This document shows, piece after piece, positions 1 through 64,000 of a stretch of DNA of 64,000 bases (position 1 is the first letter of the stretch; each line of letters opens with the position of its first letter). The translations under genes were made by a program, and so were the position numbers. The notes under the pieces are model-generated. The model was not told the origin of the DNA. It worked only from the letters and a program-made list of their open reading frames with translations, and did not search any database. The stretch lies in NCBI GenBank assembly GCA_053919585.1, contig CM132784.1. The stretch is one strand, 5' to 3'. Source of the DNA: Euprymna scolopes (Eukaryota).

Positions 1-1152
1 AAAAAATATTCTCTCATTTTTGTTCACAATTAGCATATTCCAAATCTGCATTAAATTTCCTAAAAAAACAAAAAAAAAAATTAAGTCCAGAGCTCAACTA
101 GAAGTTGTTTTATGATATTTTGAAGTTGCCTAGATCGCGAAAACTTTCATGCGCGCACTGTAACCAAGAGATTGCTGCTCTAAATCCAAGCGTTTGCAAA
201 AAATACCCTAAAATGGTCAAAAATTGCTATAAAAGACAGTTTATTCTTTTTCTATGGGTTTGTGGTTGTGAAGAGATCATACCAGAAGAATAATTGCTTT
301 CAAAAGATTAGAGTATATGAAAAATTCAGCATTTCACGGAGAAATTTGAGAAAAATTCACATATAAATTGCTGTTTTTCCGGGGGGGGGGGTGAAATTGA
401 CTAAACCCGGACCTTCAATCCAAAACAAGTCAAAAACGGCTATTCCTCACATATCAAAAGATAGTATTTTCTGAAAGTACAATCTTTACACTTTCAGAAT
501 CTGTCAGTTTTATGATGTGACTCTTAGCCGTTTTTTTAGTTTATTGCTGATCAATTTCAGAGCCAATGTCACAGGTTTCGGATGAAAAAATCAGAGCTCC
601 AATAACTCAACGCAGCAAAAATCCCCAAAAATTACACTAAGGGACAAAAAAAAAGATTTAACATGTTCCTGATTGTTTTAAGAGAGTGGGAGGAGCATAT
701 AAAGAGGATAATTGGTCTTAAGGCAATGTAAAAAAGGAGAAATTGGGGAATTTTTCTCTAAAATCTGACAAAAATAGCATTATTTCCTCCCTATTTTCCC
801 CTAAAAGACAAAAATTTTCCACAAAAAAAAAAAAGGAAAACTCAAAGAATAATCAATATAACCTCTAAACAATATTGTTAGCTACATCCTAGCCAATTTC
901 TACCATTAAAACATGCTTTTAAGTTGATTTATTTCCATTTGTAGCCATTTTCAGGAAATCATATTTGAAAATTCGAAGGTGTAGAATAAAGGGCATTATT
1001 GCAAACTTTTAATTCACATATCTCGACATCCGTACAATCTTTTTCAATTCTCTAAAAAGCAGTATATTTGTGGATTGAAACTCTTAATGCAATGAATAAT
1101 TGAGCCAAGACCCTCCAGCTCTTGACTTGAAATTGATGTCATGAGAGTAGGT

Positions 1153-1298
1153 GTTTCATCATACCTTTCATTGGATAATACTCCCTGCTATTGCATCATA
1201 CATTTATATGCACACTATTGCAACATCAATGTTCCCATGGTATTGCATCATACTTTGTATTGCATCAGATTCATTATTGCATCATATTTGTTGCATCA
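1153..1298 (+). promoter_or_regulatory. Cluster of six C/EBP-ATF (AARE/CARE)-like 9-mers upstream of the transposase
   Basis: GTTTCATCA at 1153; ATTGCATCA at 1190, 1242, 1259, 1276; GTTGCATCA at 1290. Could also be a decayed minisatellite. Confidence 0.35.
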
Positions 1299-1349
1299 TG
1301 TGACTTCTATTTAATCCTCAGATTCTCTTTTTTCTTATAGTTAGTCAAA

Positions 1350-3515
1350 ATGGAAGATAACGCAACTGTATCCACAAACGAACATGAAGTGTTCGAGTTC
1401 ATTGCTGCACACAAAGGTCTTGATTTTGGTGTCACTGAGAACCAGTTCCGTACCGAGAGCAACATCCTTGATTGTGCTGCTTACCAAACCTTCAAAAGTT
1501 GCTGGACTCAGTTCAATCGTCTGAAGGACAAACATGGGAAGAAAGGTGTTGCTTTCATTGTTCTACAAGGTCGATCAGATGCGTACCATTTTGACAAGGC
1601 ACCTACTGTTGAAGGGCCCAAAAAGCGGAGAAAGAGCTTTCCTGATCTCGGTGATAAAATGAAGAAAGAGAGAACTGCTGAAATATATTGATGATCGTGT
1701 TCAGAGGGAATTCCCAGAACTGTCAACAACTCAACTGCTTGGGTACTTAATTCACCGTATCAACCTTCAGTCCAATAAGAGCGTCGCAAGGGTTGGACAC
1801 GAATTATTCCAAGAATCTGCCACATCTTATCTTTCAGCAACGAGGAAGCAGTTGCATTGATGCATAGTTTGACCTTGAGCAGAGATCAAATGAGAAAAAT
1901 GCGCCACCTCTTAGCTACGAAAGGTATTCATTTCCCCACCAGTAACGAGTTGCTTGAAGCAAGAAAGAAGTTGAGACCTGTGATCACACCAGTGCTTGAT
2001 GGCCGTGGTGTTCAAGTCCAATATAAGGAGCTGGTGAAAATGACAGTGGAATCGGTTCTGAAAGTTGCTATGAAGGAGAAGAACATTGATTTTTGTGGTG
2101 GTGAGCTGGAAATGACGTTTAAAGATGGAGGTGATGGTGTAGGACAGCAGGTGGTTTGGAACATCAAGGAGATGTTGGAGAGTAAGGAAAATATGTTTCA
2201 GTACAGTATAATACCACTGAAGCTCGTGTTGCGGAATAAAGAGACAGTCGAAACATTGTGGATCAACCATACACCAAATTCATGCCGCACACTTCGACCA
2301 TTGTTTCTAATCAGGGAGTCTGAAACTGATGAGGATCTCCTGAATCTCGTAATACCCATAACAGACAAGGCACGCTCTGAGCTGAAAGAAGGTGTGTGTG
2401 TGAAATATCAGGAGGACAATGCTGTTAATGTGAAGATAACCATTCATGACTCAATGAAAGATCTCAAATTCAAGAGACATATATCTGGTTTAGGTGGAGC
2501 TGATTGCATCCTTTGTATCAGTCAAATGAAAGATTGGACAGATTGCGAAAAAGTTTCTGCAGGATTTCCAATTGAAAGGTCTGCAGAGGAAACGTGGAAG
2601 CTTTATGAACAGTTGGTTAATGAAGAGGGCGATGTGCCTACTGAAGCAGGAGACTTTGAAGTTTGTCAAGGGCTTACTAAAAAACCACTTACCACATCGG
2701 ACCAAACAAACATCTGCGTCACCCATTCATACATTAATGTCACCACATGGTTTTTGAAAGTTCTGTATCGATGTCATATAGATTACAAGAATTGGGTCCA
2801 GAAATCTGGACCACTTGGTGAACCAATTCGGCAATCCAGAGAAAGAGTACTTGATGCGATTCTTTATGCCACAGGACTTTACCTCGATCGATGCAACAAA
2901 GCAAATGGAAAAGGTGGAATATCAACAGATGGTAACCAGGGGAGACGATTTTTCTCTGAGGATATACTCGGTGCCATCACAGAGTTGCTCTCGGGTCGTT
3001 CCTCCATTAAACATCAAGAAAACATTCTCCTTCTGCATCGCCAACTTTCCACCATTCTGTCTGTTGTGTCGTCTACACAGAAAGTTGACTTGACCAAGCT
3101 CAAGGACTTATGTGACACAGCTACATACAACATAATCGACAATTTTCCTTGGATCAGGATCAACCAAACTTTGCATGGAACACTTCATCACTCAGTCGAG
3201 TTGATTGGTTTGAATGACGGTCACGGTCTTGGAGGTATGTCTGAGGAATGCTTAGAAGCCAACAACAAAGATATTCGGAACTATCTCCAGTTTTTGTCTC
3301 GGAAAATCTCACCTATTGCACAGCTGACAGATGTAATGAGCAGGTTATTAGAACGATCTGATCCTGTCATATGTCAGTTGAGTGCACGAATCCAGCATCC
3401 GAAATATTGCATAGAATGTGGTGCCACTGATCACACTATTCGTTCACATGCTAGACTGTTCAACCTCCCAAAAAGATGGTATTATTCTCTTGTAGAGGAT
3501 ATTCTTTTGAATTAA
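1350..3515 (+). pseudogene. RAG1-core-like (Transib superfamily) transposase, about 720 aa, two N-terminal frameshifts (~1680, ~1830), 552-aa core open
   Basis: Motifs FKDGGDG, MKDLK, CILC, HGTLHH, SEECLEANNK and RSDP parallel RAG1 KESCDG(D600), GYDEK(D708), the Zn ligands and SEGNESGNK(E962). The intervening frame KYIDDRVQREFPELSTTQLLGYLIHRIN aligns with copy B. Confidence 0.88.
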
Positions 3516-4173
3516 TGCAATGCTATTGTCTACCATGAAATGGGTATTGTTCTGCATAGATTTCACTGACCCATGTATTGGTAAGAGTCGTTTTATTCAT
3601 TGTTTCCCTAGTATGTTATAAATCATATTTGCAATGCCTTGTTCAGCTTGTTGAAATGCTTTGTCTCTTTTCTTGATCTTTTTTCTCTTTGATCTTAGCC
3701 ATTAGTTTCAGAAAAATAAAATGAATGGATCGAAAGTTACATGTGTCATGTTCGACCAATTTAGGGCATTTTGACCTATTGTGGCCCTCTCAGGGACCCC
3801 GGAACTTACTGAAAATGGGCAAACAGTGCAGTTTCGGGTGTAAAACATCCATTTTTGAGTTCAGCACCATGGAAAATCACTAAAGAGACATATATATCAA
3901 TAATTTTCAAAAATCTGAGAATGTTAACTACATGCAAAATTTCAGAAAAATACAATGGATAGTCATTGAGAATTTTGGAATGCATGCACGAGGGTGAATT
4001 ATAAGGTCCAAATCCGACTAAAGTCGGGGATATTCTTGGACCCCAAAATGGGAAAAATAGCCTGGAAACCATTTTATTTATGCTCCGATAGTACTCACAG
4101 TGTTGTAAATGATTATTCTGACATAATAAGCCTTTTTTAGGTCGCATAAATCAGTAAAATCTGTGTCACAATC

Positions 4174-4208
4174 CTATTTCCAAAGTTTCGCGATCTTGGC
4201 CCACTGTG
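4174..4208 (-). repeat. Right terminal sequence of copy A: CACAGTG-19 bp-TGGAAATAG
   Basis: Reverse complement reads CACAGTG GGCCAAGATCGCGAAACTT TGGAAATAG. Confidence 0.8.
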
Positions 4209-4930
4209 CATCACTTGGAATTTTAAGCTGAATAATATCATTAAGTTCATGGACGTTTTTGTTTTGAGCTGCAAGAATAGCTCGTTTACTCAACCAACTG
4301 GAATTCTTATAATTAATTTGAATATCTGGATAAATCTTTTTACCAATTCTTCTTTTGATGTAACTAAATTACAGAAGTTAAGAGTCACCATTAACACGGA
4401 TCAGCCGAAACATTTTTGTTGTCAATTTCCCACAATTGATGCAAAAATTTCTCTGCAGATCAAGCGTTCTGCAACTGGACATGCATATTTTGAGTTAAGT
4501 TTAATGTCTTCACATGGGGCCAAAAAGAGTATTTGAGGCAAACATTTATTTCATCTGCTGGTGTTGATTGAGAAATTACAGGTAACGTTTGTCTGAAATC
4601 TCTTACAAGCAATATTACTGCATTCCCAAATGGTCTGACATTACCACTACCACACAAATCTTGCAAGGATCGATCAAGAGTCTCAAGTGATTTTTTTGTG
4701 CATTTCTGTAATATTTTTCCCATGCTGGATGTTTTGGAAATATTGAACATGGGAGTTTTAAAAAATTGAATGTATAATAGTAATTTCAAAGCAGAATGAG
4801 TAGTTCTTCTACCTGGTAGTAAGGTTGCAGCCAATCCGTATGCAGCAAGAGCCAAGACTGTCATTTTGTCATTGAATGGCTGCCAAAATTAATTTAATTA
4901 GAAAGGTTTTACCAGTTCCTCCTGGTGCTG
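4209..4930 (-). mobile_element. Helitron Pif1-like helicase fragment, degenerate
   Basis: APGGTGKTFL Walker A, AATLLPGRRTTHSA, RDFRQTLPV, LTQNMHV and RAILAAQN motifs, with stops and frameshifts. Confidence 0.85.
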
Positions 4931-22274: not shown

Positions 22275-25200
22275 TCAGTGTGAAGGATGTGCATGTTTGT
22301 TACAAGCAAGTTCCTCAATTTAAGGAGCAGTATTAGATATGCATAATCGTAGGTCATGCTCGACGTTAAGTTGTGATTGATGTTTAGTTTTCATATTCAA
22401 CAGCGTTGAAAATCCTTGCTCGCACATGTAAGTGCTAGGGAACATCAGTAAAGAGTTCAAAACTTTCAGATACAACAAGGTAAATTTCATTCATTTTAGA
22501 TTAGAACTTTGTGAGAGAAAGAGTTTCAAATGCATCTTTTGCATCAACTCTAAGAAATCTTTTTCACCAACTCCAAGAATTTTTCTTGCATGTTATCTGG
22601 GAGAATGTGCACATTCACAAAGAATTGGTTTCTAATCAATTTTGATTCCATTTCAGTCAGTTAGGGGAAAATAAGACTGCAACTCCATCTGCAGAGAAGC
22701 TAGATGTGATTGCACAAGCTGCACCACATCTAGTTTTTCTCCAATGTTTTTACTTCAAAGTTCCAGCTTCATGGTGAATGACCTTTTCATGGTGAATGAC
22801 CTTTTCATGGTGAATGACCTTAGTTTGTCCATGAAATCAATCACAGTGGCAAAACGGCCTTGTAGGGATAAGTTAAATAAGTTGAGGCGTAAGAATGTCA
22901 TTCAGGTAGACCAACTTCTGAAGCCATTGACTGTCTGACAGTTTTATGGTGAGCTCATGTGACTTAGTCTTATCACATACGAAGAATTCAGCAAGCTCCT
23001 CCTTTAGTGGTTCTACTCTTGTTACCACATTCCCCCGCGACAACCAACTAACCTCAGTGTGAAGGGGTAATACTTCTTCATCACTTCCAAACTCTTGGCA
23101 CAGTAGGGAAAACAGTCTTGTATTTATGGCACTTGATTTGATGGCATTTACCATGTGCACATCTTCAAGTACTGATTTCGACTCGGGTGGGGGAGTTTTA
23201 TAAACTGTGTCCATCGCTTTATTGCAGATTACAAAATAATCAATATTTCAGTAAATATAAGTTATAAAAAGCTGAAAATTACACCATCCAAGGACTGTAT
23301 TAAGGTGAGATAAATCCTAAAATTTCATCAAAATTCATGTTATATTTAAAAAGTTATGTTATTTTTTTAATATTCAAGGAATTTTCACCGTTCATCGCTT
23401 TATTGCAAGTCTTCTAAGATAATGTTTTAGCTCAATAAAACAATACCAAAGCATCATAAATTTATATTGAACACATTTTCTGGGGAAAATTAACAAAAAC
23501 AAAGGCACATCCCGAGGGCTAAGTGTCAAACAAACAAATTATTTGTTCACATATCCCCCGTTTTGAAATTACATTAAACAACCTTTTGTCCACCGAGGAG
23601 GTCAATTGTTTGATCTGAGATGGAGTAATGGTTCTTGCAACGTCGAGTATTTTGTTCCAAAGGGCATCCTTCGAAGAAAACTGCTCTCCTCCCTCATAAA
23701 CTCCTCGTTTCAATATTGACCATAGGTGTTCGATGGGGTTAAGGTCCGGAGAACACGGTGGCCAGGGCATGAGGGTTTCTCCAACAAAGCCCTGAGATCC
23801 AAGGAAGGATGTAGTTGCCCTAGCAGCATGAGATGGGGCATTGTCATGCATAAAAATAATCTTAAAACGACGTGACAAGGGAAGATCATCTAGCCATCGT
23901 AACAAATTCTCATTTAGAAAGGCAGTGTAGGCATTGCTGGTGAGCTTGACACCTTCTGGCACTCGGAATGGTCCACATAGCTTATCCCCAATAATTCCCG
24001 CCCAAAACATTATGCCTCCACCTCCCTGTTGGCGACGAAATCTATAAGGCGTTGGAGTTCCATTTGGATTCCAAACTTTGGCCCATCCGTCCAGTTCATC
24101 AAGGGTAGCACGAGCCTCATCTGTAAACAGAACATTTTGGCAATCCATTTTCATATTTTTGTGCCCAAGCCAATCGTTTTTCTTTGTGGGTTTGGCTCAA
24201 TGGAGGCCTTGGAATAGGATTGATGTTCCTTGCCATTTCATTCAGTACATTGCATCGGGCTTGTCTGGACCTTGGTATGACTCCAGCCCTCGCAAAAATT
24301 GTTGCACTGGTGCTGTTTGGGTTGCGCACAATCTCTCTACGAATTTTTCGAAGATCCCGATCAGAAAGGTTCCTCCTTGTGCCCTTATCTTTCCTGGAAT
24401 TGATGTTGGGGTTCTTGACGAATGTAGCTAAAATTCGGGGATCCCTTTTTAGTTCTGTGGCTAAATTTATGATCGAGAGTCCTTCTGCTAGTCCTGCAAT
24501 AATCCTCTGCTTCTCGGTAGCTGTTAAACGACTTTTTTTGGCATTTTATGAGACCTGCAATAAAGCGATGGACGGTGAAAATTCCTTGAATATTAAAAAA
24601 AATGACATAACTTTTTAAATATAACATGAATTTTGATGAAATTTTAGGATTTATCTCACCTTAATACAGTCCTTGGATGGTGTAATTTTCAGCTTTTCAT
24701 AACTTATATTTACTGAAATATTGATTATTTTGTAATCTGCAATAAAGCGATGGACACAGTTTATGCCAGAGCATATCTATTAAGCATACAATGAAGATGC
24801 CTTGTTTCAGAATTCACCTGATTCACTTTTCCTCAAAACCCTGATTGATGACCAAGTATTGCTGGTGCTCCGTCAGTTGTGCATGCACATACATTATTCC
24901 AAGACTGTCCTTCTCTTAAAAAACAATGAGACTTCATTAAAAATGTCTTCACCTCTTGTAGTCGAGTTCAAGGTATGACAGAACAAGCACTCCTCCTTGA
25001 AGTCTTGACCACTGACGTATCGGGCAAACACCAGGAGTTGGGTACAAGCAGCTACATCAGTCGACTCATCAAGCTGAATTGCAAATTTTCCCAAAGATGC
25101 TTCCCTTATTTCAACAATTACTTGTTGTTTGACATAACTATTTGTCGGTGAACAGTATCATTTGGGAGAGGTACTGATGTGACCCTCTGCTCAGCATCAC

Positions 25201-28050: not shown

Positions 28051-28102
28051 GCTACAAAGCTGAACGATGAAAACAAACAATCAAAAATGCCGGCAACTAA
28101 GG

Positions 28103-28140
<38 letters not shown>

Positions 28141-28199
28141 CCGGAAATTATTCTCTAGAGTAGATAAACTTAGGACTTTATAAAAAAAAAAAAAGCTAG

Positions 28200-28241
<42 letters not shown>

Positions 28242-28714
28242 AAAAAATGTAAATTAGATATTGTTTACACATAGAAGCGTTACGACTTTTATTCTATAGA
28301 TAGGCACTCGACCAAGTCATCCGGAAGTAGAAATCTCCTGTCACTCTAGTAAGCCATATGCTAGCTAACAGTTGATAAAAAAAACCGCTGGCGGAATCTC
28401 TAGTGCAAAAACGTTAAGTATTTTTATTTTTTATTTTTACTTTTTTATTTTTTTTTTTTCTAAACTAATCCTAAATGTTTTGTTACATTGTTTTAAATGT
28501 ACTTTTCGTGTTTTATGTATTTTGTCTGTATTTCTCCTATCTTTTTGTCTTTATTCCGTCTTATCCGTCCCCCCCCCTCCTGCTACAAAGCTGAACGATG
28601 AAAACAAACAATCAAAAATGCCGGCAACTAAGGAAAAAAAAAAAAAAAATGCCGGAAATTATTCTCTAGAGTAGATAAACTTAGGACTTTATAAAAAAAA
28701 AAAAAAAGCTAGAA

Positions 28715-28746
<32 letters not shown>

Positions 28747-29197
28747 AAAAAATGTAAATTAGATATTGTTTACACATAGAAGCGTTACGACTTTTATTCT
28801 ATAGATAGGCACTCGACCAAGTCATCCGGAAGTAGAAATCTCCTGTCACTCTAGTAAGCCATATGCTAGCTAACAGTTGATAAAAAAAACCGCTGGCGGA
28901 ATCTCTAGTGCAAAAACGTTAAGTATTTTTATTTTTTATTTTTACTTTTTTATTTTTTTTTTTCTAAACTAATCCTAAATGTTTTGTTACATTGTTTTAA
29001 ATGTACTTTTCGTGTTTTATGTATTTTGTCTGTATTTCTCCTGTCTTTTTGTCTTTATTCCGTCTTATCCGTCCCCCCCTCCTGCTACAAAGCTGAACGA
29101 TGAAAACAAACAATCAAAAATGCCGGCAACTAACGAAAAAAAAAAAAAAAAATGCCGGAAATTATTCTCTAGAGTAGATAAACTTAGGACTTTATTT
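28051..29197. repeat. Near-identical tandem duplication, unit ~500-530 bp, about 2.2 copies
   Basis: GCTACAAAGCTGAACGATG starts at 28051, ~28582 and ~29083; copies differ mainly in homopolymer length. Confidence 0.95.
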
Positions 29198-29649: not shown

Positions 29650-32600
29650 AATGGAGAGTAGATAATACAGTGGATGTGTTATCGGCAGCTCCAGTAACTC
29701 TCGCTTCTCCTATTTTGTCATTCAGTCCTCATTCAATGAGTGATGTTTCTGACAAAGGGTGAAGAAAAAGCTGCTTAAAGGTCGGTACTACTTGGTGACC
29801 AGTAGTCTGAGATGTCGGATATTTTTCTGTCTTTGTCTGTCCTTGTTGCCATGTCACTAGTAAGGGTGCTGGAGGTAAACGTTTTGTCTGGGCTGACGTT
29901 ATCCGCCTGATAGTCAGGGACCCGAACCTTGGATTAACCACTAAGGAGGCTGTCCTATCAGCAGGCGCAAAGTACTGGGACTGCTGTATTGCCATTTGGT
30001 GAGTGGATCTGGACCATGCAGTAGTCTCTGGTGGGGCCTCTCGATGCCATACTAGTGGGTAATTGTTACGGCTTTACCTTTTCGTGTGCTACAAATAAAA
30101 AAAAAAATTTTCCTGTCTTTTTCTCTCTTACTTTCCCTCTCTGTACTGCTCTAACCAAGTATGCCGACCTATTCCACAAATCCCAAAACCTCAACATGAA
30201 ATATCTCCAGAATAAAAACTCGATTAAACCTAGAACCCCATCTTCCAGCGTAGACCCCTACTACCAGGTCTCCTTCTCCAATATCAGGGGTCTACGTTCC
30301 AACCTTCCAGAGGTTGAAACCCAATTACAGGAGACGAAACCGGACATATTATTTCTATGTGAAACTGGAATAGGGCCGACCACTTCCCTAGATGAGTTCA
30401 TAATTAATGGATACTCCAATTTAACAGCTAAATCTGACTCCCAAGATCGCCATGGGCATGGAATATGTGCCTACATTAAGGATGGCTTCCCATGTGGCAG
30501 GGATATCTCTAGAGAAGATCCTAATTTACCCTATATGTGCTTCAGGGTTGCACTTGCTAACACCACTGTATTTATATTTGCCCTCTATAGGCCCCACAAC
30601 AGCGGAGTTACTATCTTTAAGAGCATATCTGAGAAAATAGACCACATACTGTCTTCACATCCCTCGGCTAACATCCACATCTGTGGTGACTTCAACGTCC
30701 ATAACGTGGAATGGCTAACCCATTCAAATAAGACAGATGATGAGGGGAGGTTTTGTCATGATTTTGCCATTGCTTATGACCTCACTCAGATTGTTCGCGA
30801 ACCCACCCGTGTGCCCGATACACCCAATCAATATGCAAGCCTCTTAGACCTTTTTCTTTCAACTTCCCCTGAGCTATGTTCATGTACCGTTCATTCTCCT
30901 TTAGGATCCTCCGACCACTCCGTCGTATCAGTTAAGATAAAAACAAAATGTAAGAAGCCATCAGACGTACCCCTCCACCGTACTGTATACCGATACTCTA
31001 TGGCTGACTGGGATAGCTTCCGTACATTCATATCTGATTTACCTCTGCACTCCATGTTTAAAAAGGAAGTGTCCTCTATAGTATCAGATCTGACCGAATG
31101 GTTAATTGTAGGCATAGACCAATTCATACCATCTAAAAAATTCCAACAAAAACCTAACAGCCAGCCATGGTTCTCCCCAGAATGTGCTGCTGCTATCGCG
31201 CACAGAAATCACTTTTTCCATAACTACCAACGTAATAGATGCACTGAGACTAAAGCTGCTTTCAGGACTGCCAGCAACCACTGTAAAAGAGTAATAAAAA
31301 ATGCAAGAGAGCTATATGCCCAGTCTGTTAAATCCAAGGTAGCTGATCAGCGGCTTGGTTCCCACCAGTTTTGGCAAATAACAAATAGGATCTTGAACAG
31401 AAGTGTGCGTTCTATCCCAACCATTATCAATGGACCAGAGGTTATCTCGTCAGCATCAGACAAGGCCAAACTATTTGCAAAGAACTTTGCAGCTAATTCT
31501 ACCCTATGCGACGAAGGCCATCAACTCCCCATATTTCCTCCTATAACACAGAACAAGCTAGGTAACATACAAATATCCGTGCATGAGGTCGCCAAGCTAA
31601 TAAAAAACCTAGATTCCAGTAAAGCAACTGGCCCTGATGGCATCCCAATTATAGTGTTAAAAAAGCTTCAACCAGAACTTGCTCCCATACTTACGAAACT
31701 ATTTAAGCGCTGCCTTAAGGAGAAGTGCTTTCCGACCCCCTGGAAGACCTCCTCAGTTTGCCCTGTATTTAAGAATTCAGGTGATAAGTCATCTCCCTCT
31801 CAATACAGACCAATAAGTCTTCTCTGTGTTATGAGTAAGTTACTTGAATCAATATTAAATAGAGAAATAGTAAACCACCTCAGCAGGAATAACCTTCTTA
31901 GTGACACACAATATGGTTTCCGCTCTTCAAGATCTACCGCAGATGTGCTGACGGTTATATCCCACAGGATTAGTGAATCTCTTGACGGAGGCTTCCTTTC
32001 TAGGGCAATTGCTCTCGACATATCAAAGGCCTTTGACAAAGTATGGCATAAGGGTCTACTTCACAAGATTTCCAGCTACGGTATAACTGGAAATGTTTTC
32101 TCAATCATTAAATCATTTCTCTCTGATAGGCTCATAAGAGTAGTGGTAGATGGACAAAAATCGGAGGCCTGCAATATAAATGCTGGAGTCCCTCAGGGGT
32201 CAATCCTGGGCCCAACTCTCTTCCTGATCTACATCAATGACCTCCCTAAACACATACTTAAATCATTCGTTGACATCTATGCTGATGACACGACCATCTA
32301 CGGCAACACATCAAAGGCTGTAAATGACGAAGTTCTCTCGGATTCTCTCTCCTCTGATCTCGAGCGCGTGGTTCAGTGGGGGAATATGTGGCTAGTTACC
32401 TTTAATGCATCCAAAACCAAACTCCTATCCTTACATCATCAACGCTCTGATCCCCAGCTGGCATCAATTGTGATGGATGGCTCTCGTCTGGGTGAGGCCC
32501 CGTGTTTTGACAAGCTTCTGGGTTTGACCTTTACTCCTGATCTGAAATGGAACACGTACATCAAGTCTGTGGCCAAGGTCGCAGGAAAGATGGTGGGATC

Positions 32601-40649: not shown

Positions 40650-41850
40650 TGGTATTGGCAGAGTTTGCTGTAGATCAATGCACAGTCATGCATATTCCTG
40701 CCGTATTCCTTCATTATCCTCTGTCCTTCAGCAGGGTTTTCTTTATGATTAAGTTCTTCCACTTGTTATTTCCTCATCACTTGTCTCTTCTGCTGCTTTT
40801 ATTATGATCTTCACCCCATCACGTTCTTTTTAAACATGGAATACGGAGATAAATCTGATATTAATGTACGAAAGCTATCCCAGTCAGCCATAGAGTATCA
40901 ATATACTGTACGATGGAGAGATATGTTGGAGGACTTGTTGCATTTTGTTTTTATCTTAACTGAGACAACTGAGTGGTTGGAAGATCCCAGTGAGGACAGA
41001 ATGGAAGATGAACATAGCTCAAGGCAAGTTGTGAGGAAAAGGCCTAGGAGACTTGCATACTGACGATTAGTGTTGGGCACATGGGTGGGTTCATGAACAA
41101 TCTGAATTAGGTCGAAAGCAATGGAGAAATCGTGATAGAACCTCCTCTCATCATCTGTCTTGATTGAGTGATGTTAGCCAAAGCATGAGCAGACAGGATG
41201 TGGTTAATTTTCTCAGATATGCTCTTAACGATAGTAACTCTGCTGTTATGAGGGCGATAGGGGGCAAATATAAACAGAGTGGTGTGAGCAAGTGCAATCT
41301 GATAACACATATAGGGCAATTTAGGGTCTTCTCTGGAGGTCTCTACCACAGGGAAAGCCATTTCTAATGTAAACACTGTCGGTTCAATGCCAGTTTCGCT
41401 TAGGAAGAATGTCTGGTTTAGTCTCTTGTCATTGGATTTCAACCTCTGGAACGTAGAACCCGTGATGTTGGAGAAGGAGACATCATAGTGGGGTTCTACA
41501 TTGGAAGTTAATTCTTGGTTCAGTCATGTATTCTTTCTGGAGACTTTTCATGATGAAGTTTTGGGATTTGTGGAATAGGTCGGCAGACTTGATTAGTGCA
41601 GGGCAGAGAGGGAAAGTAAGGGAGAAAAAAGTGACTAAATATATATCTTTTTTTTTTTTTTTTTTTTTTTGTAGCCCATGATAATGTAAAGCCGTAACAA
41701 TTATACATTACTATGGTATTGAGAAGCCCAACCAGAAGCTACTGCATGGCCCAGAACACATTCACCAAATGGCAATACAGCAGCCCCAGTACTTTGCACC
41801 TGCTGATAAGCAGGCTCCTTAGTGGTTAGTCAAAGTTATAAGTCCCTATG
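40650..41850 (-). mobile_element. Non-autonomous chimera: CR1 5' UTR plus endonuclease joined to a non-CR1 tail
   Basis: Matches ~29930-31065 in reverse, then diverges after CATGTTTAAAAAG. Confidence 0.75.
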
Positions 41851-49125: not shown

Positions 49126-52100
49126 CTTCTGGTTGCTGGTTTCCAGAAACTCTTGGTCATAGATAAGTACAATTTACTTTTTAGAGTGTCGCAATGACCA
49201 AGGGTTTATTGGATATCTGAAGGAAATACAAAAGAGTGTTATTTACACGGCACAGACGTGCATATCAAGCAAAATGAATAGTAGTCCTCGAGAGAATATA
49301 TTGTTTCAAACCAAAATGCTGTGGCAAAAATGCATACTTACCAACGAAGTTTTGTCTGCTTAAAATATGAAAGAAATCAAACGTTTACAGCAATATCATT
49401 AGTGTCTTGTAATCAAAATCTGAACCAGTGATGTAATAGTTGAAATCACTCATAACTTTGAATTTCTGTTTATTGTACACAATATAAACTGAAGTAAACC
49501 AACTTTGCAAAACAAAACTTAATCGAGGGTTAGTGTTAGTGTAAAAAGCAACAAAAAGGTTCAGTCTGAATCGTGTAGATTGTTCAGTGAACTTACCATA
49601 TGCCAGAATTGAGATTGAAAATTAAATTTATAATATTAGTACCAGTTCTCGGATAGTACAAAAGTACAATTTCTGGTTTTGAAGTAAACACTTTCCAGTT
49701 CCCCTGCACTACCATAACAGGAAACCCCCTAAAACATACCTTACTCTGGACAAATCGAATAAACTTGGTTATTATAGAAACTGAGCCATTTGCTTGGAAT
49801 GATCAGTGATTTGTTATTTTAAGAAAACATATTACAAAGTAAAAAAAATAATCATGAATATAATAAAAACTAATTAAACATGAAATAAAACACAAGAAAA
49901 TTTTATAAAAATAGATAACACCATATAAGTGAGGCAAGGAGTCTATCAATTATGACAGAAATAACTAAAGTGTTGACCCATGCAAAAAATATCGAAGATT
50001 GCAGTTTTTAATTCATTGTAATTCTGGTTAAATAGGACTTTCTATTAATCAAATAGAAGATGAAAATTTAAAAAAGATTGTTAAAATATCCTATATTAAA
50101 AAAAGAATCAAACAGTTATGATAAAAGCACATATCTTATAAACAATGAAAAGTCAAAGACACCATTAATATAAAAAAGAAACATTAAAAATATAATTGTT
50201 TTTGTGAAAAAGATAATACTCTGTAGTCCATGTGAGAATGCTGCAAAAATCTGTTCTTGTATAATGAATTAAAGATCTGAAGGATGTCTTACTTCCTGTA
50301 ATATAATTTTATATTGGATGAAGAAAAAAAAATTGAAATAATTGAGTAAAATATATAACGAAATATTGAGAAATATAAAGAAATCCGATACTCATGTTAT
50401 AACACATCCCAGATAAGGTATTTTTCTATTCGGCTCAAAACTTCTAATATGGCACTTATGTCTGCAAATCAAACTGTAATTAAAAAAAACAAAAAAACTA
50501 TGAATTTTCTGTAAAACCAAACTATAAAACAAAGTTAAAGCTCCAATAAAGAAAAGTTAAAATAATTGCTGGCAGAAAATAACTAAGAAATCAAATATTT
50601 CCTGGCACAAAAAAAATTAAGAAATCAATGTAATTTCCAAGCATAAATTTTGTAAATAGAAAAAAAAAGGATACTAATATAATAGAAATTAAAATTACCA
50701 CGAAAATTTCCTATCGTAGCCTTAAAACGTTGAACTGATAGGAATAAAGGTGGAGACTGCTGGTTGACGGTAAGCTGCTAAGAATTAAGGTGGAGACTGT
50801 TGGTTTTTGATGCTGTTGCTTGCTTTCTTTTAAAACTGAAAAAGCAAACATTAAAATAATTCCTGGAACAAAATAACTAAGGAATCAATGTAATTTCAAA
50901 GCATAAATTTTGTAAATAGAAAAAAAATCATACTAATATAATAGAAATTAAAATTACCACATAAATAATTTTATTAGAAAAATAGTTATGACAAAATTAA
51001 TCATTTAAAATTAGTTAAAATTTGAAAATATCAAATTTGGAAGGTATTAATTTTGTAATACAAAAAAATGATTTGTAAATACCATAGGATGAGCTTTTGG
51101 ACTTAATTGAATTGTCCTTGAGCTTTATTTATAGTCATAGCAAAGCTGAGTTTTACAGAAAATTGTAGACGTTCAAAATCAAATGGTAAGTCTGTTGGTC
51201 TCATTGGTACTCTTGGGATGAAGCAGTTAACTCCTGCGTATTTTCTGGACATGATTGTTGCTTTCAAGACATGGGGCATCATACTTTTTATGATGAGCCT
51301 TGTGCCATTGCAGAGTTTGGGTGGATCAAGATTACGAAGTAGCATGATTGGTGCACCAAGCTTCAGCAACAGGGCATGTGGAGGAGTCCCTGCTGGCTGT
51401 AAACTATTCCGAAACTCTGTCGGATAGTTTACAATCTCTTCCTGTGAACAGATGGTATCAACTGAAGTATATAATTTGATTTCTCCAGGTAATCTGTATA
51501 AAAGTTTGATATTCATTTCATACACAGATTCATTTTTTAATGCTAAAAGAGCTCGTTCACAGAGCCATTGGATATCCGTATGCCGATTATCAAGGTCTGC
51601 AAATACTCTTGCTATCAATTCTTCTTTGGTTTTAAGTGTTTCAAAAGGCAACTGAATTTGGTCAGAAGAATCCTTTTCTAGGAGGGCATCACCTACTTGT
51701 AATAGTTTAGTGGCAAATTCACCAACAGCAGAATCAGCATATAAATGTACTCGCATATTAAGGGTTAAGTTCATTGTTTCAACGTGATGCCATAAATAGG
51801 ACTTTTTAAGACCTGCATTAATCTGATCGGCTCGAGTACCTCTGGGAACAATTGGAAGGGTTTGTCTGAAATCACCAGCCAAACCAAAGTTACTCCTCCC
51901 ATGATTTTTGTATTACCTTTTAAGTCCTGTAGTGTAGAGTCTAATGCTTCTATTGCTTTTTTGTGGCTCATTGTTGCTTCATCCCAGATTATCAACTTAC
52001 AACTTTGTAGTAATCTGGCCTTTGAAGATTCTTTTTTTATGTTACAAAACGTTTTTTTCTGTCGTGTAAGATCTAGTGGTAGAGAAAACGTATAGTGTGC

Positions 52101-53186
52101 TGTTCTACCACCATCTAAAAGTGTTGCTGCAATCCCACTTGATGCGACTACAAGTGCAATATTGTTTGTGAGGCGAACTTTTGCTAGAAGCAAGTTCAAT
52201 AAGAATGTCTTGCCAGTTCCACCAGGAGCATCAATAAAGAATGTTATACCTTGGTCATTATTAATACTTTCGAAAATGTTCTCGTAAATATTTCTTTGTT
52301 CGTCCACAAGTCTCGGTTCATTTCGGTTGATGAAGTGATTACATGCTTCATGATTGAAAGAGGTCTCCTGTTGTATTCAGTAATTTATGTTCATTATTTC
52401 ATCAGGCTCTGGCATTCCACAAGTAGTTAATGTACGGTTAAGTGCTTGGACTCGACAGGATAGGTCACTGAGAGATAGATTAAAAATTTCAGGTGAAAAT
52501 GCAATTGCCATATTTTCATTTTGCAGTCGGGTTTGATGAAGATAATCTTTAGACATATCAGTTTTGAATTCCTCCCACAGCAAATATGGTTGCTCAATCT
52601 CACAGGCATAATTGCGAATAACTGTCTAATTTGACTGGCTACTTGTGAAACTGATGCTTCTTGTAAGGTTTTTTGCCAATGTTCATCATCTTTCAAAAGT
52701 CGACGTAATGCACATTCTTCTTGGTGTGTTGTACACAGTACACCTTGAAATGTTCGGAGATACTCAAAGGATGTTGGTCCACGAACAGTGTGGAGGAGAA
52801 GCAGTCGTAAATAAAAACACTCTCTATTATTGGGGTGTACAGTATAAGTACGACCAATAGCATCGCTTTGATGTCATGTCCAGGAATAATACGTCCTTGC
52901 TTATGATGGACCTATTTTTTTTTGCTTACTCCACATATAAGTAGGGATTTCTATATATAAAAGTGATCGGGCAAAATCATCTTGGCAAAGGCAAAAAAAC
53001 GCAGTAAATGTAGTTTGTGGTGATGTCTGAGCTAAAGCATGTATTGTATCCTCATTGAAATAAACTCTCTGTCCATTTTCAAGATATACTGCTAAATTAA
53101 CCACGGTCGTTAATGATTGGTGTATTTCAAATCCAAAGATCCTCTATATACGAGCTTCGTTACTGGAGATGTATCGGCCTGTCTGA

Positions 53187-54848
53187 CAGGGTTGGATCAA
53201 ATACTGACTTTTAACAATTGAAATACAAATACAAATACTTTCGTTAAGGTTACCAGAAATACAAATACAAATACTTTTATTCCTAACTCTAAAAATACAA
53301 ATACAAATACTAACGCTAAAAATACAAATACTTTTATTCCTCAATCTCAAAATACAAATAAAAATACAATAACTGATTTAAACAATCTGAAAATATGCGA
53401 AGAAAAGAAGAAAAAAGAAGAAATATTTCCTTCCAAATTTGACATCTACATTACACTCTATATCATGTCCTCATTGCATTTTATCATCATTAGAGCTCTG
53501 AAAGTTTCCGGGCCAAGTTTGGCTCGCTCTGGGGTATAAAAATTACCAGCCTTGCTGAAAACTCTTTCAGATGGTGCCGATGTTGCACAGCACCCTAGAA
53601 TATTTCTGGCGAAAGGCTTCAAAATCTTGAAGCTCTTGTTTTCTCGCCAGTACCTCAGTGGGTTGACGTCAAAAGCCAGAACACATTCTTCTAAGTAGGA
53701 ATCGAGTTCTGCCTTTACCGCTGTAGTGTCGCTTATTGATGGACTTACATTTAGCTTCCCAGCTGGTGGCATGTAGGCAAAAAGACGAGGGCGTTTTGCA
53801 TTCATGTCAGCCTCGTCTTGATTTGTGTTCACGGTCATGAAAAACTTCCTCTCTTGAACTGTGTTCTTCAAAGACAACTGAGTTGACTGCGAAATAATTA
53901 GGTCCACAATCTTCGAAATATTTTTATTTTTCATTTTTTCACATGACAGCCATGACAGCTTAAACCTGGGGTCCATGACAGCTGCAGTAATGACATCAGT
54001 CCTATCAAGAAACGGATGCAATCTCATTTTGATAGAAGACTGTAGTGCATTAGCCAAGTTTAAGCAGTAGGTTGGTTTACTTTCCATGAATAGTTTGAGG
54101 CTGTGTTCAAGGCCAAATACAACTGGTGCAACGCAAGAAAGTGTCACCATGTTTTCTCCTTCCACTTGCGACATTGCCTCTTGGAATGGGTCCAAAATTT
54201 GCACCACTTCTTTTAGCATTGCTATTTCCACTACGTTCAATTCTCGTATGTTCTTACACGATCCTAGGAGACAAATAGCTGAGTTGACGCCATTGACATC
54301 TTTGAGAACTGACTTAAGCATAGTCAGTTGAGAGTTCCATCTAGTAGCATTAGCAGCCTGCAGTGAAGTCCCAATATTTTCCAAGAACGGTGCTGCCACA
54401 GTAGATCGCCGTATTGCAGCTACAATACTACAGCACTTGTGTATCACAGTTGCAATTGCGCTGCATCTGACACTGGGATCATTGAAGGCATCTCGTATGC
54501 AGATTTGTTGTGTGTGTGCAAAGCAACTGGACCGATCCGGTGGAAGAAGGGCAAGGACTTCATTCAGATCAAGTTCTTCTTCCAAAATATCAAGTTCTTC
54601 TTCCAAAATATCAATGTTATCTATATCACATGTATGTGAACAGGGTTGGATCAAATACTGACTTTTAACAATTGAAATGCAAATACTTTCGTTTAGGTTA
54701 CCAGAAATACAAATACAAATACTTTTACTCCTAAGTCTACAAATACATTTATTCCTAAATCTAAAAATACAAATACAAATACAATTACATTAAAATTGTA
54801 TTTAAATACAATTGAAATACAAATACAATTGTATTTGATCCAACCCTA
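53187..54848 (-). mobile_element. Composite hAT (Ac/ZBED-like) element with 3' transposase remnant 53458-54640 and terminal 208-bp MITE
   Basis: TIR (C/T)AGGGTTGGATCAAATAC at 53187, 54641 and inverted at 54848; AAATAC subterminal arrays; CFAH, TRWNS, MDPRFK and SAPSERVFS motifs; TSD CTGTCTGA / CTGT--GA. Confidence 0.85.
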
Positions 54849-54952
54849 CTGTGATAAATTTTGATTTCATCTCTTTCAGCTTCATCACCAATTCTAAAAG
54901 TAGCCATATCACTACCCTTATTGATATATTTTGTTATGTATTTAATTGCTTT

Positions 54953-57020
54953 GTAAGTAAGGCAAACTCCTTCTGACAACAGTTGAGCTCGAGCAGTATC
55001 AGTAGATGGAATCACAAAGTTCAAAGGGTCCTCGTCTGTTTCTTCCTCTCTTATCAAGAAGAGAGGACGTAGAAACCTGCAGTTGTTAGGAGCGAGGTTC
55101 TGCCAAAGAATTTTGGTAGTGTTATCATTGAATCGTCGTTGGAGTTTCAGGGGTGTAATGCCATACTGGAACATGTTTTCTTCAGCATCAAGCATATTTG
55201 TAAAGTTCCACACAACCTGCTGACCTGCACCATCGCAACCATCTTTAAAGATCATTTCCAGGATACCATCCTTCTTCTCTATCTCTTCAGGTGGAACCAA
55301 ACCAAGAATCGATGAAATTGTAATCTTAACCACATCTATGTACTGGACCTGGACTCCTCTGTCGTTGAGAACAGGAGAAATAACTGGACGGAGTTTCTTT
55401 CTTCCCTCTAACAACTCATTACTAGTAGGAAAGTAAATTCCTTTGGCAGCCAATAAGTTTCTCATCTTCCTCATCTGGTCCCTGCTAAGTGTCAGCGAGT
55501 GCATAATAGCGATAGCCTCGTCCACTTCAAAGGAGCGTGCGTTCGTGATGCTGGAGGTAAAGATCTCATGACCGACTTTGGCAATCTTCTTCTCGGACTG
55601 AATGTTAATTCTATGAATCAGATATCCAAGTAGCTGGGTGACACTCAATTCAGGGCATTCTTGTTGGACATAGTCACTGATGTGTTGAAGAAGAGATTCA
55701 GTTCTTTCCTTCTGCATCCGGGAGCCCAAATCAACAAATTTTCCTGCGTTTCTTTTGTGGTTCTACTGAAAGTGGACACTTTCTTTCGAAGTCGGTTGTT
55801 AATTTTGAAGCCTGCTCGAGGATTTTAGCGGTTCCCACTTTAGCATTTTTTAAACGCCCGAAACGCTTCCAACCTGTCATAAAGAATGTTGTCACTTCTT
55901 CACACTCCTTAATACCATGCGTGTCCATGAAATGTTGCAGACATTTTTTTATACTCAGGAGATTTGTTTCTGCTGATCTGAGAAGCCACATCAATGATTG
56001 ACTGGAAAATGTGGTACTCAGAAACAGCTGTGCGATCATCATCTACAATGGATGCCATCTTTGATCTGTTGATAGAGATATACAGATAATCAATTACAAG
56101 ATGATATTGATAAAGCATGAAACAACATTATACTAACACTAGATAATGCCACGTTACCTCCCCTTGCTAATGATCTATGATCCTAATTCTAAATGCAGGC
56201 AAGTTGATTAAACTAAATTATCACAATCAACACAAAGAACACATCAACACAAAGATTGAATGTTAGCTATTTCCTATGGAATTCACTGGAAAGAGCTCAA
56301 TGGAGGAAAGATACCATTTTTTACAGAACTCAAAAACCTTGTTTTGTTCTTAAACAATGTGAATTTCAAAATTGTCGAAAAACCTTGTTTCGCCAATTTG
56401 GCTCCAAATATAGATAAATTGAATTTCAAGGTAATTTTTCAACAATAAATCGTATTCAAACCGCTAATAGTGACAAGTCAAACTGAACATTTTTTAAACC
56501 TCATCCTAAATTTTTCAAAACATATATGGTTTAGTATGTCACTATTAGCGGTTTTCTTGCTAATTGCAGGGTTATTCATAAATTATCGTGCATTTTTTGC
56601 AAAAAATATGGCTATTTTCGGTCATTTTTTGCTAATTTTGGATAATTTTTTGGCCAAAATTTGGATTTTTATCATATTAAATATAGTTTGAATGGCCTAA
56701 ATCACATATCTAAAGGTATATTAGTCAATTGATGATACAATCATAAGTATTTTGCCTCTTCTACCATAGGAAATTCGTAATCTGAACCGATCAGCAATTT
56801 TTACCAATTTTTAGCTTTGCCGTAATCATATCGTTCCGCGATGCGACGCGTGACCGAATTTGGCATGATTTCAAATTGCGATAGAATCTCTCCACGATGT
56901 GCTAGAGACCTAATTTTTTTTTTTGTTGATTCAGAAATTGGATGGAGATGACGTTTATAGCTTGTAAAAATCTTTGTTGAGACTTTTATTTTGGCTATTT
57001 CCACCTCTGGGCCCACTGTG
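54953..57020 (-). mobile_element. RAG1-like/Transib copy B, 5' half only
   Basis: Left terminus CACAGTGGGCCCAGAGG at 57020; transposase from about 56058 (MASIV) is clearly homologous to copy A (MHSLTLSRDQMRKMR, FKDGCDG, LRPLFL); truncated after GVCLTY. Confidence 0.88.
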
Positions 57021-57993
57021 CCACATGGGCCATGGATTAGTTGTGTTTTGATGATATCAAAAATAATTGGATCAGCAGTTTCATCTGGCAGCTCAGCTGA
57101 AATAATTTTGTCTATGTCATCTAATGTTCTCTTTACACCAAATCAGGGTGTGAGAGTGAGGAAGTCCTCTCTTTTACCACTCACTTGTTGTCATGCAAGC
57201 ATTTAATTCACCAAAAATGTTTCCTTCCTTGATTAGCCAGAGAAATTTTTTAGCTTTTCATGAAATACCCGAGCAATTAAGTCATGGCGATCCTTGGTTG
57301 TTTGGTATTGAAAAAGTTCATCTTTGATTTCAGTCGACTTGGGATTACAAGTAAATGTAATAAAAAGATCAGCACGACCAAATTTTCTGATATAAGCTAT
57401 TGCATCCTGAATTCTTTGATGCATATATCGCGGTCCTCCTGTGTAGGTTGAAGGCAAGATAATTGGCTGTCCAATATTTGTATGATCACCATCAGAATTT
57501 ATAGCATCTCTTAGGTGTATATAATCATCCACTCTTAATTTTTTTTGATTTCTGTATGAAACCTAATCTTTCGGTTTCTATTTTCGCACACATGTCCACC
57601 ATGAATTGACTGGTCACTTATTTTAAAGATAAAATATGATTACAGTCATCTCTAGCCATGAAAAGAAATGAATAAAAACATTTTGCTGTAACTAATCGAT
57701 TATTATCAAGACCTGTTACTGGGTTTTTTTTGACAGAGCTGAAAATGATACCCATCTTGACCATTCCAGAAAATAAGTGGGTATTGAAGTGCATCATAGG
57801 CTCTGTGAGTCTCAGCAATACGTCGCAATTGTCCACTTCTTAATTGCAAAATAATGTCTACATGTTCATGTTCCTCATCCATCATTAAGATTGCAATTTC
57901 ATCTGTCACAGGTGCATTGTATCTCCGTTCATGTTCTCCAGATGGACGCTTGTCTGCTCTTATGATGATTTTTTGATTTTCCATATGCTGCAT

Positions 57994-63479: not shown

Positions 63480-64000
63480 GATGGATTTAGCCAAGGTCTA
63501 TTAGGCTTTGATATTTGGCATTAAATGGCCAGAATACCAAACCCATCTATCCTAAGAAAAGCTGAATCTGGCGGCAGCCACACTCAGTCATGCATATTTC
63601 TGCCGTATTCCTTTATTATCCTCTGTCCTTCTGCAGGTTTTTCTCTGATTAAGGTCTTCCACTTGTTATTTCCTCTTGTCATCACTTACCTCTTCTGCTG
63701 CTTTTGTGATCTTCAACCCATCACATTCTTTTTAAACATGGAACACAGATCAATGTACCAAAGCTATCCCAGTCAACCATAGTGTCAATATACTGTACAA
63801 TAGAGAGATATGTTGGAGGACTTGTTGCATTTTGTTTTTATCTTAACTGAGACAATCGAGTGGTTAGAAAATCCCAGAGGGGACAGAACGGAAGATGAAC
63901 ATAGCTCAGCACAAATTGTGAGAAAAAGGTCTAGGAAACTTGCATACTGACCATCTGTATCGGGCACATGAGTGGGTTCATAGGTCGAAAGCAATAGAGA
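63480..64000 (-). mobile_element. Third copy of the CR1-endonuclease chimera (runs off the window end)
   Basis: YASFLDLFL...SNHSIVSVKIKTK followed by the same junction and tail. Confidence 0.75.

What the first reader, a model, noticed from the sequence alone, without database searches (positions are those of the whole stretch)
4174..4208. RSS-like bipartite, asymmetric ends: heptamer plus a shared 9-mer with 19-bp vs 10-bp spacers
Seen: the copy A right end is CACAGTG-GGCCAAGATCGCGAAACTT(19)-TGGAAATAG. The copy B left end (56995-57020) is CACAGTG-GGCCCAGAGG(10)-TGGAAATAG. Both have a perfect RSS heptamer, GGCC.AGA next to it and an identical 9-mer, with spacers differing by 9 bp (close to one helical turn). 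Known: V(D)J uses 12/23 spacers. Inference: a 10/19 end-pairing rule with a non-canonical nonamer. Caveat: the two ends come from different, diverged copies.
Basis: partly seen in the sequence, partly recalled or inferred. Interest (0 to 1): 0.8.

Follow-up and report, generated by a model that had tools for sequence, protein, structure and literature searches.

The report
Transib transposon ends, one short, one long
The two motifs are the ends of two decayed copies of a RAG1-like (Transib) jumping gene, and complete relatives show each element really carries one short and one long end, but this RSS-like asymmetry is already described for Transib and RAG-like transposons, so it is a new member of a known kind.

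Summary
Window 4174-4208 and 56995-57020, both read on the minus strand, are CACAGTG + 19 bp + TGGAAATAG and CACAGTG + 10 bp + TGGAAATAG. The combined pattern occurs twice in the window and in none of 100 shuffles.

They are the 3' end of copy A and the 5' end of copy B. These are two diverged (about 60% DNA identity), dead copies of a single-gene Transib/RAG1-like DNA transposon.

- All seven contigs holding both ends are asymmetric by 9-10 bp, and none is symmetric.
- Three elements in A and B's own clade are 10 bp at the 5' end and 19 bp at the 3' end.
- One element in another clade is 10/20.
- One nested clade has the sides swapped (19/10 and 21/12).
- Two elements have perfect 5-bp target-site duplications.
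- The distal 9-mer changes between clades but stays the same at both ends of each element.

The transposase has a RAG1 NBD-like domain and a C-terminal zinc knuckle, both absent from HzTransib.

A strict pairing rule remains untested. Asymmetric Transib and RAGL ends are published (Kapitonov & Jurka 2005; Tao 2022; Martin 2023). This scan had also already noted the same 10/19 ends on an intact copy elsewhere in this genome.

The parts
4174..4208 (-). 3' terminal inverted repeat of Transib copy A. Heptamer 4202-4208, TR2-like GGCCAAGA 4194-4201, 19-bp interval 4183-4201, distal 9-mer TGGAAATAG 4174-4182.
   Evidence: Homologous 3' ends with the same layout are in L001, L002, L003 and L013.
56995..57020 (-). 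5' terminal inverted repeat of Transib copy B. Heptamer 57014-57020, 10-bp interval 57004-57013, distal 9-mer 56995-57003.
   Evidence: 5' ends with the same heptamer-10 bp-TGGAAATAG layout are in L002, L013 and L026 (L002's heptamer reads CACTGTG), and close variants in L003 and L005.
1..4208 (+). Body of Transib copy A. Its 5' tip lies about 28 bp before the window start.
   Evidence: 92% identical over 3.6 kb to L001. Alignment of 5' regions places window base 1 just inside the 5' TIR.
1350..3515 (+). Copy A transposase gene, broken by two frame changes near 1690 and 1850. The longest ORF is 1857-3515 (552 aa), and its DDE-bearing motifs are present.
   Evidence: Pfam RAG1 E 1.7e-9. HzTransib 6pqn E 2.4e-24. 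Frames read. 93% identical to the intact 730-aa P0001.
54950..57020 (-). Transib copy B, 5' fragment only. The N-terminal part of the transposase (56042 to about 54950) is kept. No B-type coding sequence is found elsewhere in the window.
   Evidence: The ORF tail after about 54960 no longer matches copy A.
76..91 (+). Conserved subterminal block (A-run + TTAAGTC...) about 100 bp inside the 5' tip. Copy B has it at 56903-56918 on the minus strand. Function unknown.
   Evidence: Also present in L001, L002, L005 and L013.

Best explanation
The two sites are terminal inverted repeats of a single-gene, RAG2-less Transib DNA transposon family. Each end has two modules. The proximal block is about 15 bp: the RSS-type heptamer CACAGTG, where the transposase cuts, plus a TR2-like GGCCCAGA. 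The distal block is a 9-11-bp motif (TGGAAATAG in this clade). One end of every element places the distal motif 9-10 bp, roughly one helical turn, further from the heptamer than the other end does.

Shown: the layout, its presence within single elements, the 5-bp target duplications, its conservation over more than 50% protein divergence, and a RAG1 NBD-like domain plus a C-terminal zinc knuckle in the transposase.

Inferred: the catalytic core and zinc knuckle read the proximal block. A hinged NBD-like dimer reads both distal motifs in the synaptic complex. The synapse would then favour one short and one long end, as the RAG1 NBD dimer does for 12/23 RSSs. Whether this is a strict rule is not known.

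Copies A and B in the window are dead relics: A is frameshifted and B is truncated.
For: Identity:
- The copy A ORF hits Pfam RAG1 and HzTransib.
- The P0001 model (pLDDT 87) aligns to HzTransib at Z 31.5 and to RAG1 at Z 31.

Boundaries:
- Perfect 5-bp TSDs occur in L013 (CTGGG) and L023 (CGGGT).
- There is only one long ORF between the ends.

Asymmetry within elements:
- L002, L003 and L013 are 10/19.
- L004 is 10/20.
- L009 and L010 are 19/10.
- L023 is 21/12.
- Each pair aligns as an identical proximal block of 11-15 bp, one net 9-10-bp indel, then an identical distal block.
- Single ends all fit their clade: winA, L001 and L024 are long 3' ends. winB, L005 and L026 are short 5' ends. L015 and L022 are short 3' ends.

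Selection:
- The distal motif differs between clades (TGGAAATAG, TGGAAATTG, TGGTAAAAC, TNTATTTCG) but matches at both ends of each element.
- The middle of the long interval varies in sequence while its length is kept.
- The side swap maps to one nested clade with 100/100 support.

Reader domain:
- Model residues of about 95-166 align to RAG1 residues 391 onward, which is the NBD. HzTransib alignments start only at residue 167.
- A nearly invariant CxxCGxxxHxxxxH sits at the C-terminus.

Literature:
- The NBD dimer on a flexible linker enforces the 12/23 rule (bioRxiv 10.1101/2023.08.20.553239, Introduction).
- Subgroup I Transibs have asymmetric TIRs, CTT1 and an NBD equivalent (PMC9435367).
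Against: - No biochemical data exist for this family, so binding of the 9-mer by the NBD-like domain is inferred from homology only.
- The NBD-like segment has a basic RRK stretch where RAG1 has GRPR, and its sequence match to the RAG1 NBD is not significant on its own (domain E 98).
- Only 2 of 7 complete contigs show a TSD. The others are short-read metagenome contigs whose flanks may be chimeric.
- Most relatives come from metagenomes of unknown hosts.
- Carmona 2016 (PMC4840297) found that RAG1 without RAG2 shows no 12/23 preference, so a RAG2-less enzyme may not enforce any rule.
Confidence: 0.8

Rival explanations
1. The 9-10-bp length difference is a neutral historical indel in one end of an ancestral element. 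It was simply inherited, has no role in synapsis, and only the proximal block of about 15 bp matters for transposition.
For: - All elements descend from a common ancestor, so shared asymmetry could be inherited (tree).
- For invertebrate RAGL-B elements, recognition is thought to rest mainly on the terminal 15-17 bp and CTT*, and to be insensitive to asymmetry (PMC7204232).
- This family also has a CTT-type knuckle and a TR2-like block.
Against: - The difference stays at 9-10 bp across clades with under 50% protein identity, while the interval sequences change.
- The distal motif co-varies at both ends.
- The asymmetry survived a swap of sides in a nested clade.
- Sequence beyond the distal block is unalignable between the two ends, so the block is under constraint.
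Confidence: 0.13
2. The distal 9-mer is conserved for a reason other than transposase binding, for example a host-factor site or part of terminal promoter or terminator signals. The spacing difference would then reflect different needs of the two ends.
For: - A further conserved subterminal block lies about 100 bp inside the 5' end, so the ends do carry other conserved signals.
- The long interval often contains a short A/T palindrome (AAACTTT or AAAGTTT) next to the 9-mer.
Against: - The motif is in inverted orientation at the two ends and identical within each element. That is the signature of a transposase site rather than of direction-specific expression signals.
- An NBD-like domain is present in the protein.
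Confidence: 0.05
3. Each element has symmetric ends and spacer length is subfamily-specific (A-type 19/19, B-type 10/10).
For: In the window itself the two ends come from different, diverged copies.
Against: All seven contigs holding both ends are asymmetric. These include three in the same clade as A and B with 10 bp at the 5' end and 19 bp at the 3' end.
Confidence: 0.01

Closest known systems
Subgroup I Transib transposons (Tao et al. 2022, PMC9435367)
   Same: Single-gene and RAG2-less. Asymmetric 'spaced' TIRs. CTT1-type C-terminal zinc knuckle. An alpha11-alpha12-like insert after the CxxC that HzTransib lacks. An NBD equivalent.
   Different: The published members are from ctenophores, Hydra and bacteria, whereas this family is from an unidentified animal genome and marine metagenomes. 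The last knuckle ligand is His, not Cys. Phylogenetic placement against published members was not tested, and their TIR sequences (a figure) could not be read.
Transib5, Transib2_AG and TransibN1-3_AG of flies and mosquitoes (Kapitonov & Jurka 2005, PMC1131882, Fig. 4C)
   Same: The 5' end is short and the 3' end long (RSS12-like / RSS23-like). CAC heptamer. 5-bp TSD.
   Different: Spacers are 12/23 (difference 11) there against 10/19 (difference 9-10) here. Their nonamer is A-rich, against TGGAAATAG here. Here the first 8 bp after the heptamer are conserved at both ends.
AanRAGL of Aureococcus (PMC9435367) and PflRAGL-A of Ptychodera (bioRxiv 10.1101/2023.08.20.553239)
   Same: Two conserved TIR elements with asymmetric spacing. 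AanRAGL is 4/13, a 9-bp difference. PflRAGL-A has heptamer-TR2-asymmetric spacer-nonamer with a 10-bp difference. In PflRAGL-A an NBD and a CTT zinc knuckle occur together in one protein.
   Different: Those elements carry a RAG2-like gene and this family does not. This family has no GRPR/K motif.
V(D)J recombination signal sequences (12/23 RSS)
   Same: Identical heptamer CACAGTG, a bipartite signal, and one short and one long spacer differing by about one helical turn.
   Different: Spacers are 12/23 with variable sequence, the nonamer is ACAAAAACC, and they are read by RAG1-RAG2. They are host recombination signals, not transposon ends.
HzTransib (PDB 6pqn, 6pqx)
   Same: Best structural and sequence match for the catalytic core (Z 31.5, 24% identity).
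   Different: The HzTransib alignment starts at model residue 167, so it has no counterpart of the N-terminal 166 residues, including the NBD-like domain. Its TIRs show little similarity to the nonamer, and it lacks most of the NBD region (PMC4840297).

Membership tests
Transib superfamily of DNA transposons | RAG1-core-like DDE transposase | tested here: met
   Pfam RAG1 E 1.7e-9. HzTransib E 2.4e-24, and 7.9e-51 with the profile. VIA Z 31.5. Family-invariant D270, D380 and E641/E642 align with the RAG1 D600, D708 and E962 motifs.
Transib superfamily of DNA transposons | TIRs beginning with a CAC / RSS-like heptamer | tested here: met
   CACAGTG, CACTGTG or CACACTG at every end found.
Transib superfamily of DNA transposons | 5-bp target-site duplication | tested here: met
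   Perfect CTGGG in L013 and CGGGT in L023. Five other metagenome contigs show none, and neither window copy has both ends.
Transib superfamily of DNA transposons | Single transposase gene, no RAG2-like partner | tested here: met
   There is one long ORF (733 aa) between the TSD-flanked ends of L013. No ORF of 80 aa or more lies in the 2-kb 3' part of L009. Gene calls list only the transposase inside the other complete elements, plus one unannotated 86-aa call in L004.
Subgroup I Transib (Tao 2022) | Pair of asymmetric spaced TIRs | tested here: met
   All 7 contigs with both ends differ by 9-10 bp.
Subgroup I Transib (Tao 2022) | CTT1 (CTT*) zinc-knuckle C-terminal tail | tested here: inconclusive
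   A conserved CxxCGxxxHxxxxH motif (C696, C699, H704, H709) is present. It has the knuckle spacing, but the last ligand is His instead of Cys, and it was not aligned to a published CTT1.
Subgroup I Transib (Tao 2022) | [quoted passage not shown] | tested here: met
   Profile positions 418-476 align to RAG1 and BbRAG1L. In HzTransib only 19 residues span this stretch.
Subgroup I Transib (Tao 2022) | Phylogenetic placement with published Subgroup I members | not tested
12/23-type pairing rule (RAG-like) | Efficient cleavage only with one short and one long signal | not testable with these tools
   This needs biochemistry or a genome-wide census of same-type-end derivatives.
12/23-type pairing rule (RAG-like) | NBD dimer on a flexible hinge that binds the distal motif | tested here: inconclusive
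   A domain structurally aligned to the RAG1 NBD is present at about residues 95-166. Its sequence similarity is weak, and DNA binding and dimerisation were not tested.

The most novel reading that the evidence does not exclude
This RAG2-less Transib clade enforces a true short/long (10/19-type) end-pairing rule through its NBD-like dimer. That would mean a 12/23-like rule predates both RAG2 and the RAGL transposons. Because intact family members exist, the rule and its side swap in one clade could be tested directly.
Probability: 0.35. Interest if true: 0.7.

Novelty: new member of a known kind. Interest (0 to 1): 0.4.

Why it matters
The origin of the 12/23 rule is a live question. Published work ties its enforcement to the RAG1 NBD dimer and suggests RAG2 helped to establish it (PMC4840297). 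This family is a single-gene transposase with an NBD-like domain, a CTT-type knuckle and ends that keep a one-turn asymmetry across deep divergence and even across a swap of sides. Intact members (for example P0001, or the 733-aa ORF of TSD-flanked L013) would allow a direct test of whether asymmetry-dependent synapsis exists without RAG2. For the window itself the result is ordinary: two dead Transib relics nested among Helitron debris.

Tried and rejected
- I searched the window for the partner ends. No other CACAGTGGGCC site exists, even with one mismatch. tblastn finds no further copy of the transposase. Copy A's 5' tip is just off the window, and copy B's 3' half is missing.
- The JGI metagenome scan gave only one locus long enough to hold both ends (L013). 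The other eight were too short.
- The krill contig for P0036 had no retrievable DNA.
- L005-L008, L022, L024 and L025 hold at most one end. L005 ends in tandem repeats before its 3' tip.
- L026 is a contig from a long assembly. It has a clean 10-bp 5' end, but its 3' tip is decayed, so I counted it as a single end.
- An apparent 1.3-kb short element in L020 (10-bp end plus 19-bp end) has no TSD and only 5 of 9 matches between its distal motifs, so I did not use it.
- The Liu 2019 HzTransib structure paper is not held in the library.
- Pfam gave no hit for full-length P0001 at E 0.01, although the copy A ORF does hit RAG1. This is unexplained and I did not pursue it.
- The extra CACAGTG at 4096-4102 inside copy A lacks the adjacent GGCC and 9-mer, so I treated it as chance.

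Full report
**1. Observation**

On the minus strand, window 4174-4208 reads CACAGTG-GGCCAAGATCGCGAAACTT-TGGAAATAG, a 19-bp interval. Window 56995-57020 reads CACAGTG-GGCCCAGAGG-TGGAAATAG, a 10-bp interval.
- CACAGTGGGCC occurs only at these two places.
- The 9-mer occurs three times in the window.
- The combined pattern CACAGTG-N8-24-TGGAAATAG occurs twice, against 0 in 100 shuffles.

**2. What carries the motifs**

Copy A:
- A 552-aa ORF at 1857-3515 (+) lies upstream of the first site. It matches Pfam RAG1 (E 1.7e-9) and, among solved structures, best matches the Helicoverpa Transib transposase (6pqn, E 2.4e-24). BbRAG1L and RAG1 follow.
- Its N-terminal part continues upstream to 1350 through two frame changes, so copy A is a pseudogene.

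Copy B:
- It lies on the minus strand. Its ORF (56042 to about 54950) is 66% identical to A over 187 aa and then breaks off.
- No B-type coding sequence is found elsewhere in the window.

End assignments and flanks:
- A and B share only about 60% DNA identity.
- Aligning 5' regions shows that window base 1 falls just inside A's 5' TIR, so about 28 bp are missing.
- Both copies abut Helitron pieces: a PIF1 helicase ORF at 4460-4864 and Helitron_like_N at 57233-57532.

**3.

A protein search found 89 relatives. Intact ones are 720-750 aa and come mostly from marine metagenome assemblies. I fetched their contigs and ran one JGI metagenome scan.

Ends read from the tip inward:

| Locus | 5' interval | 3' interval | Distal motif | Note |
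|---|---|---|---|---|
| L002 | 10 | 19 | TGGAAATAG | |
| L003 | 10 | 19 | TGGAAATAG / TGGAAATAT | |
| L013 | 10 | 19 | TGGAAATAG | perfect TSD CTGGG, 3,992 bp |
| L004 | 10 | 20 | TGGAAATTG / TGGAAATTT | heptamer CACACTG |
| L009, L010 | 19 | 10 | TGGTAAAAC | |
| L023 | 21 | 12 | T[T/C]TATTTCG | perfect TSD CGGGT |

Single ends fit the same scheme:
- winA, L001 and L024 are long 3' ends.
- winB, L005/L006 and L026 are short 5' ends.
- L011, L012, L015 and L022 are short 3' ends.

Pairwise alignment of the two ends of each element gives an identical proximal block of 11-15 bp, a net 9- or 10-bp indel, an identical distal block of 8-14 bp, and then no similarity. No complete element is symmetric.

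**4. Is the asymmetry constrained?**

A maximum-likelihood tree of 34 family proteins places every 3'-short element (L009, L015, L022, L023) in one nested clade with 100/100 support. Every other element of known state is 5'-short, including both window copies. The side therefore changed once while the one-turn difference was kept.

Three further points argue for constraint:
- The distal motif differs between clades but is the same at both ends of each element.
- The centre of the long interval varies (TCGCG, CACCC, ATGCC, ATGCA, TGGCC) while its length is constant.
- Family members share as little as about 40-48% protein identity.

This pattern is what selection on a bipartite, spacing-sensitive recognition site would give. 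A frozen neutral indel fits it poorly, though that rival is not excluded.

**5. The likely reader**

An AlphaFold model of the intact relative P0001 (93% identical to copy A), built on a 25-sequence alignment, has mean pLDDT 87.

Structural alignment:
- HzTransib scores Z 31.5, but only from model residue 167 onward.
- RAG1 chains that include the nonamer-binding domain align from model residues 91-110, equal to RAG1 391-408.
- Residues of about 95-166 therefore occupy the place of the RAG1 NBD.

At the sequence level this stretch lines up with the RAG1 GGRPR helix only weakly (not significant alone).

The family also has:
- A stretch of about 40 residues after the CxxC that aligns to RAG1 and BbRAG1L and is nearly absent in HzTransib.
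- A conserved C-terminal CxxCGxxxHxxxxH knuckle.

By analogy with RAG (NBD dimer on a hinge) and BbRAGL (CTT* on TR2), both summarised in bioRxiv 10.1101/2023.08.20.553239, I infer two readings. The core and knuckle read heptamer + GGCCCAGA. The NBD-like dimer reads the two distal motifs, which would favour a short/long synapse. This step is inference, and no binding or cleavage data exist.

**6. Comparison with what is known**

- Kapitonov & Jurka 2005 (PMC1131882, Fig. 4C and text) reported Transib families whose 5' and 3' termini resemble RSS12 and RSS23.
- Yakovenko 2021 (PMC8355894) built a hypothesis on that observation.
- Tao 2022 (PMC9435367) defined Subgroup I Transibs. All have asymmetric spaced TIRs, CTT1, an alpha11-12 region and an NBD equivalent.
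- Tao 2022 also described AanRAGL ends with 13-bp and 10-bp elements at 4/13 spacing. That is the same 9-bp difference as here.
- Martin 2023 described the heptamer-TR2-asymmetric spacer-nonamer layout in PflRAGL-A.
- Carmona 2016 (PMC4840297) noted that HzTransib ends have little nonamer similarity, that HzTransib lacks most of the NBD, and that RAG1 without RAG2 shows no 12/23 preference.

The present family meets the Transib criteria and most Subgroup I criteria that I could test. Phylogenetic placement against published members was not tested.

**7. Earlier notes of this scan**

One follow-up (s1-272033) had already reported the same CACAGTG + 19 or 10 bp + TGGAAATAG ends on an intact copy elsewhere in this genome, with the same conclusion. 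Another (s1-241391) placed a related copy in the 2022 branch. My results were obtained independently of these notes and agree with them.

**8. Verdict**

The asymmetry within elements is real and conserved.
- The pairing rule is untested, and the left/right assignment is clade-specific.
- It is a new member of a known kind.
- The window copies themselves are dead relics.

Noticed in passing
window 76-91 (+) and 56903-56918 (-); L013 1028 and 4638; L001 9; L002 216; L005 148: A conserved subterminal block (run of 9-10 A, then TTAAGTCTCTAGC-like) lies about 100 bp inside the 5' tip in diverged family members whose surrounding sequence is unalignable. L013 has a second direct copy about 280 bp from its 3' tip. 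It could be a promoter or a second binding site.
   Followed up: partly
window 4183-4193 and the long intervals of L001, L002, L003, L013: The extra bases of the long end contain a short A/T palindrome next to the 9-mer: AAACTTT or AAAGTTT, extending to CCAAA(C/G)TTTGG in L002 and L013. L023's long end has CAGAA...TTCTG arms. It might be a bend or a host-factor site. Significance was not tested.
   Followed up: no
window 4460-4864 (-), 51771-52307 (-), 57233-57532 (-): Helitron remnants: PIF1-like helicase ORFs (E 3e-20 and 7e-45) and Helitron_like_N (E 3e-26). Both Transib copies end directly against such pieces, so they appear nested in or beside Helitron debris. Window 4240-4363 also resembles 51511-51635 in reverse orientation.
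   Followed up: partly
window 53458-54654 (-): A 398-aa ORF with a hAT C-terminal dimerisation domain (E 5.6e-16). This is a hAT transposon remnant lying beyond the break in Transib copy B.
   Followed up: partly
window 54785-54960 (-): After the point where copy B stops matching copy A, the same ORF continues with a KYI.KY..KG.D-like stretch that looks, by eye, like a Helitron Rep N-terminus. The break in B may therefore be a junction with another element.
   Followed up: no
window 23200-23412 vs 24551-24764: A 214-bp inverted repeat at 97.7% identity flanks about 1.1 kb. It may mark the ends of a young small TIR element.
   Followed up: no
window 28051-29195; also 29928-31071 vs 40820-41835 and 40683-41094 vs 63585-63981: A tandem repeat of about 530 bp (94% identity) and several dispersed repeats of 77-85% identity in both orientations. 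These are other repeat families that were not characterised.
   Followed up: no
P0001 residues 1-90 (equivalent to window about 1350-1620): The family has a confidently folded N-terminal domain (helices 11-74 plus short strands) ahead of the NBD-like domain. It has no counterpart in the aligned HzTransib or RAG1 core chains, and its function is unknown.
   Followed up: no
L009-L012: Four contigs from different samples carry the identical 817-aa transposase and identical ends, with at least three different 3' flanks. This suggests a recently active family with swapped (19/10) ends.
   Followed up: partly
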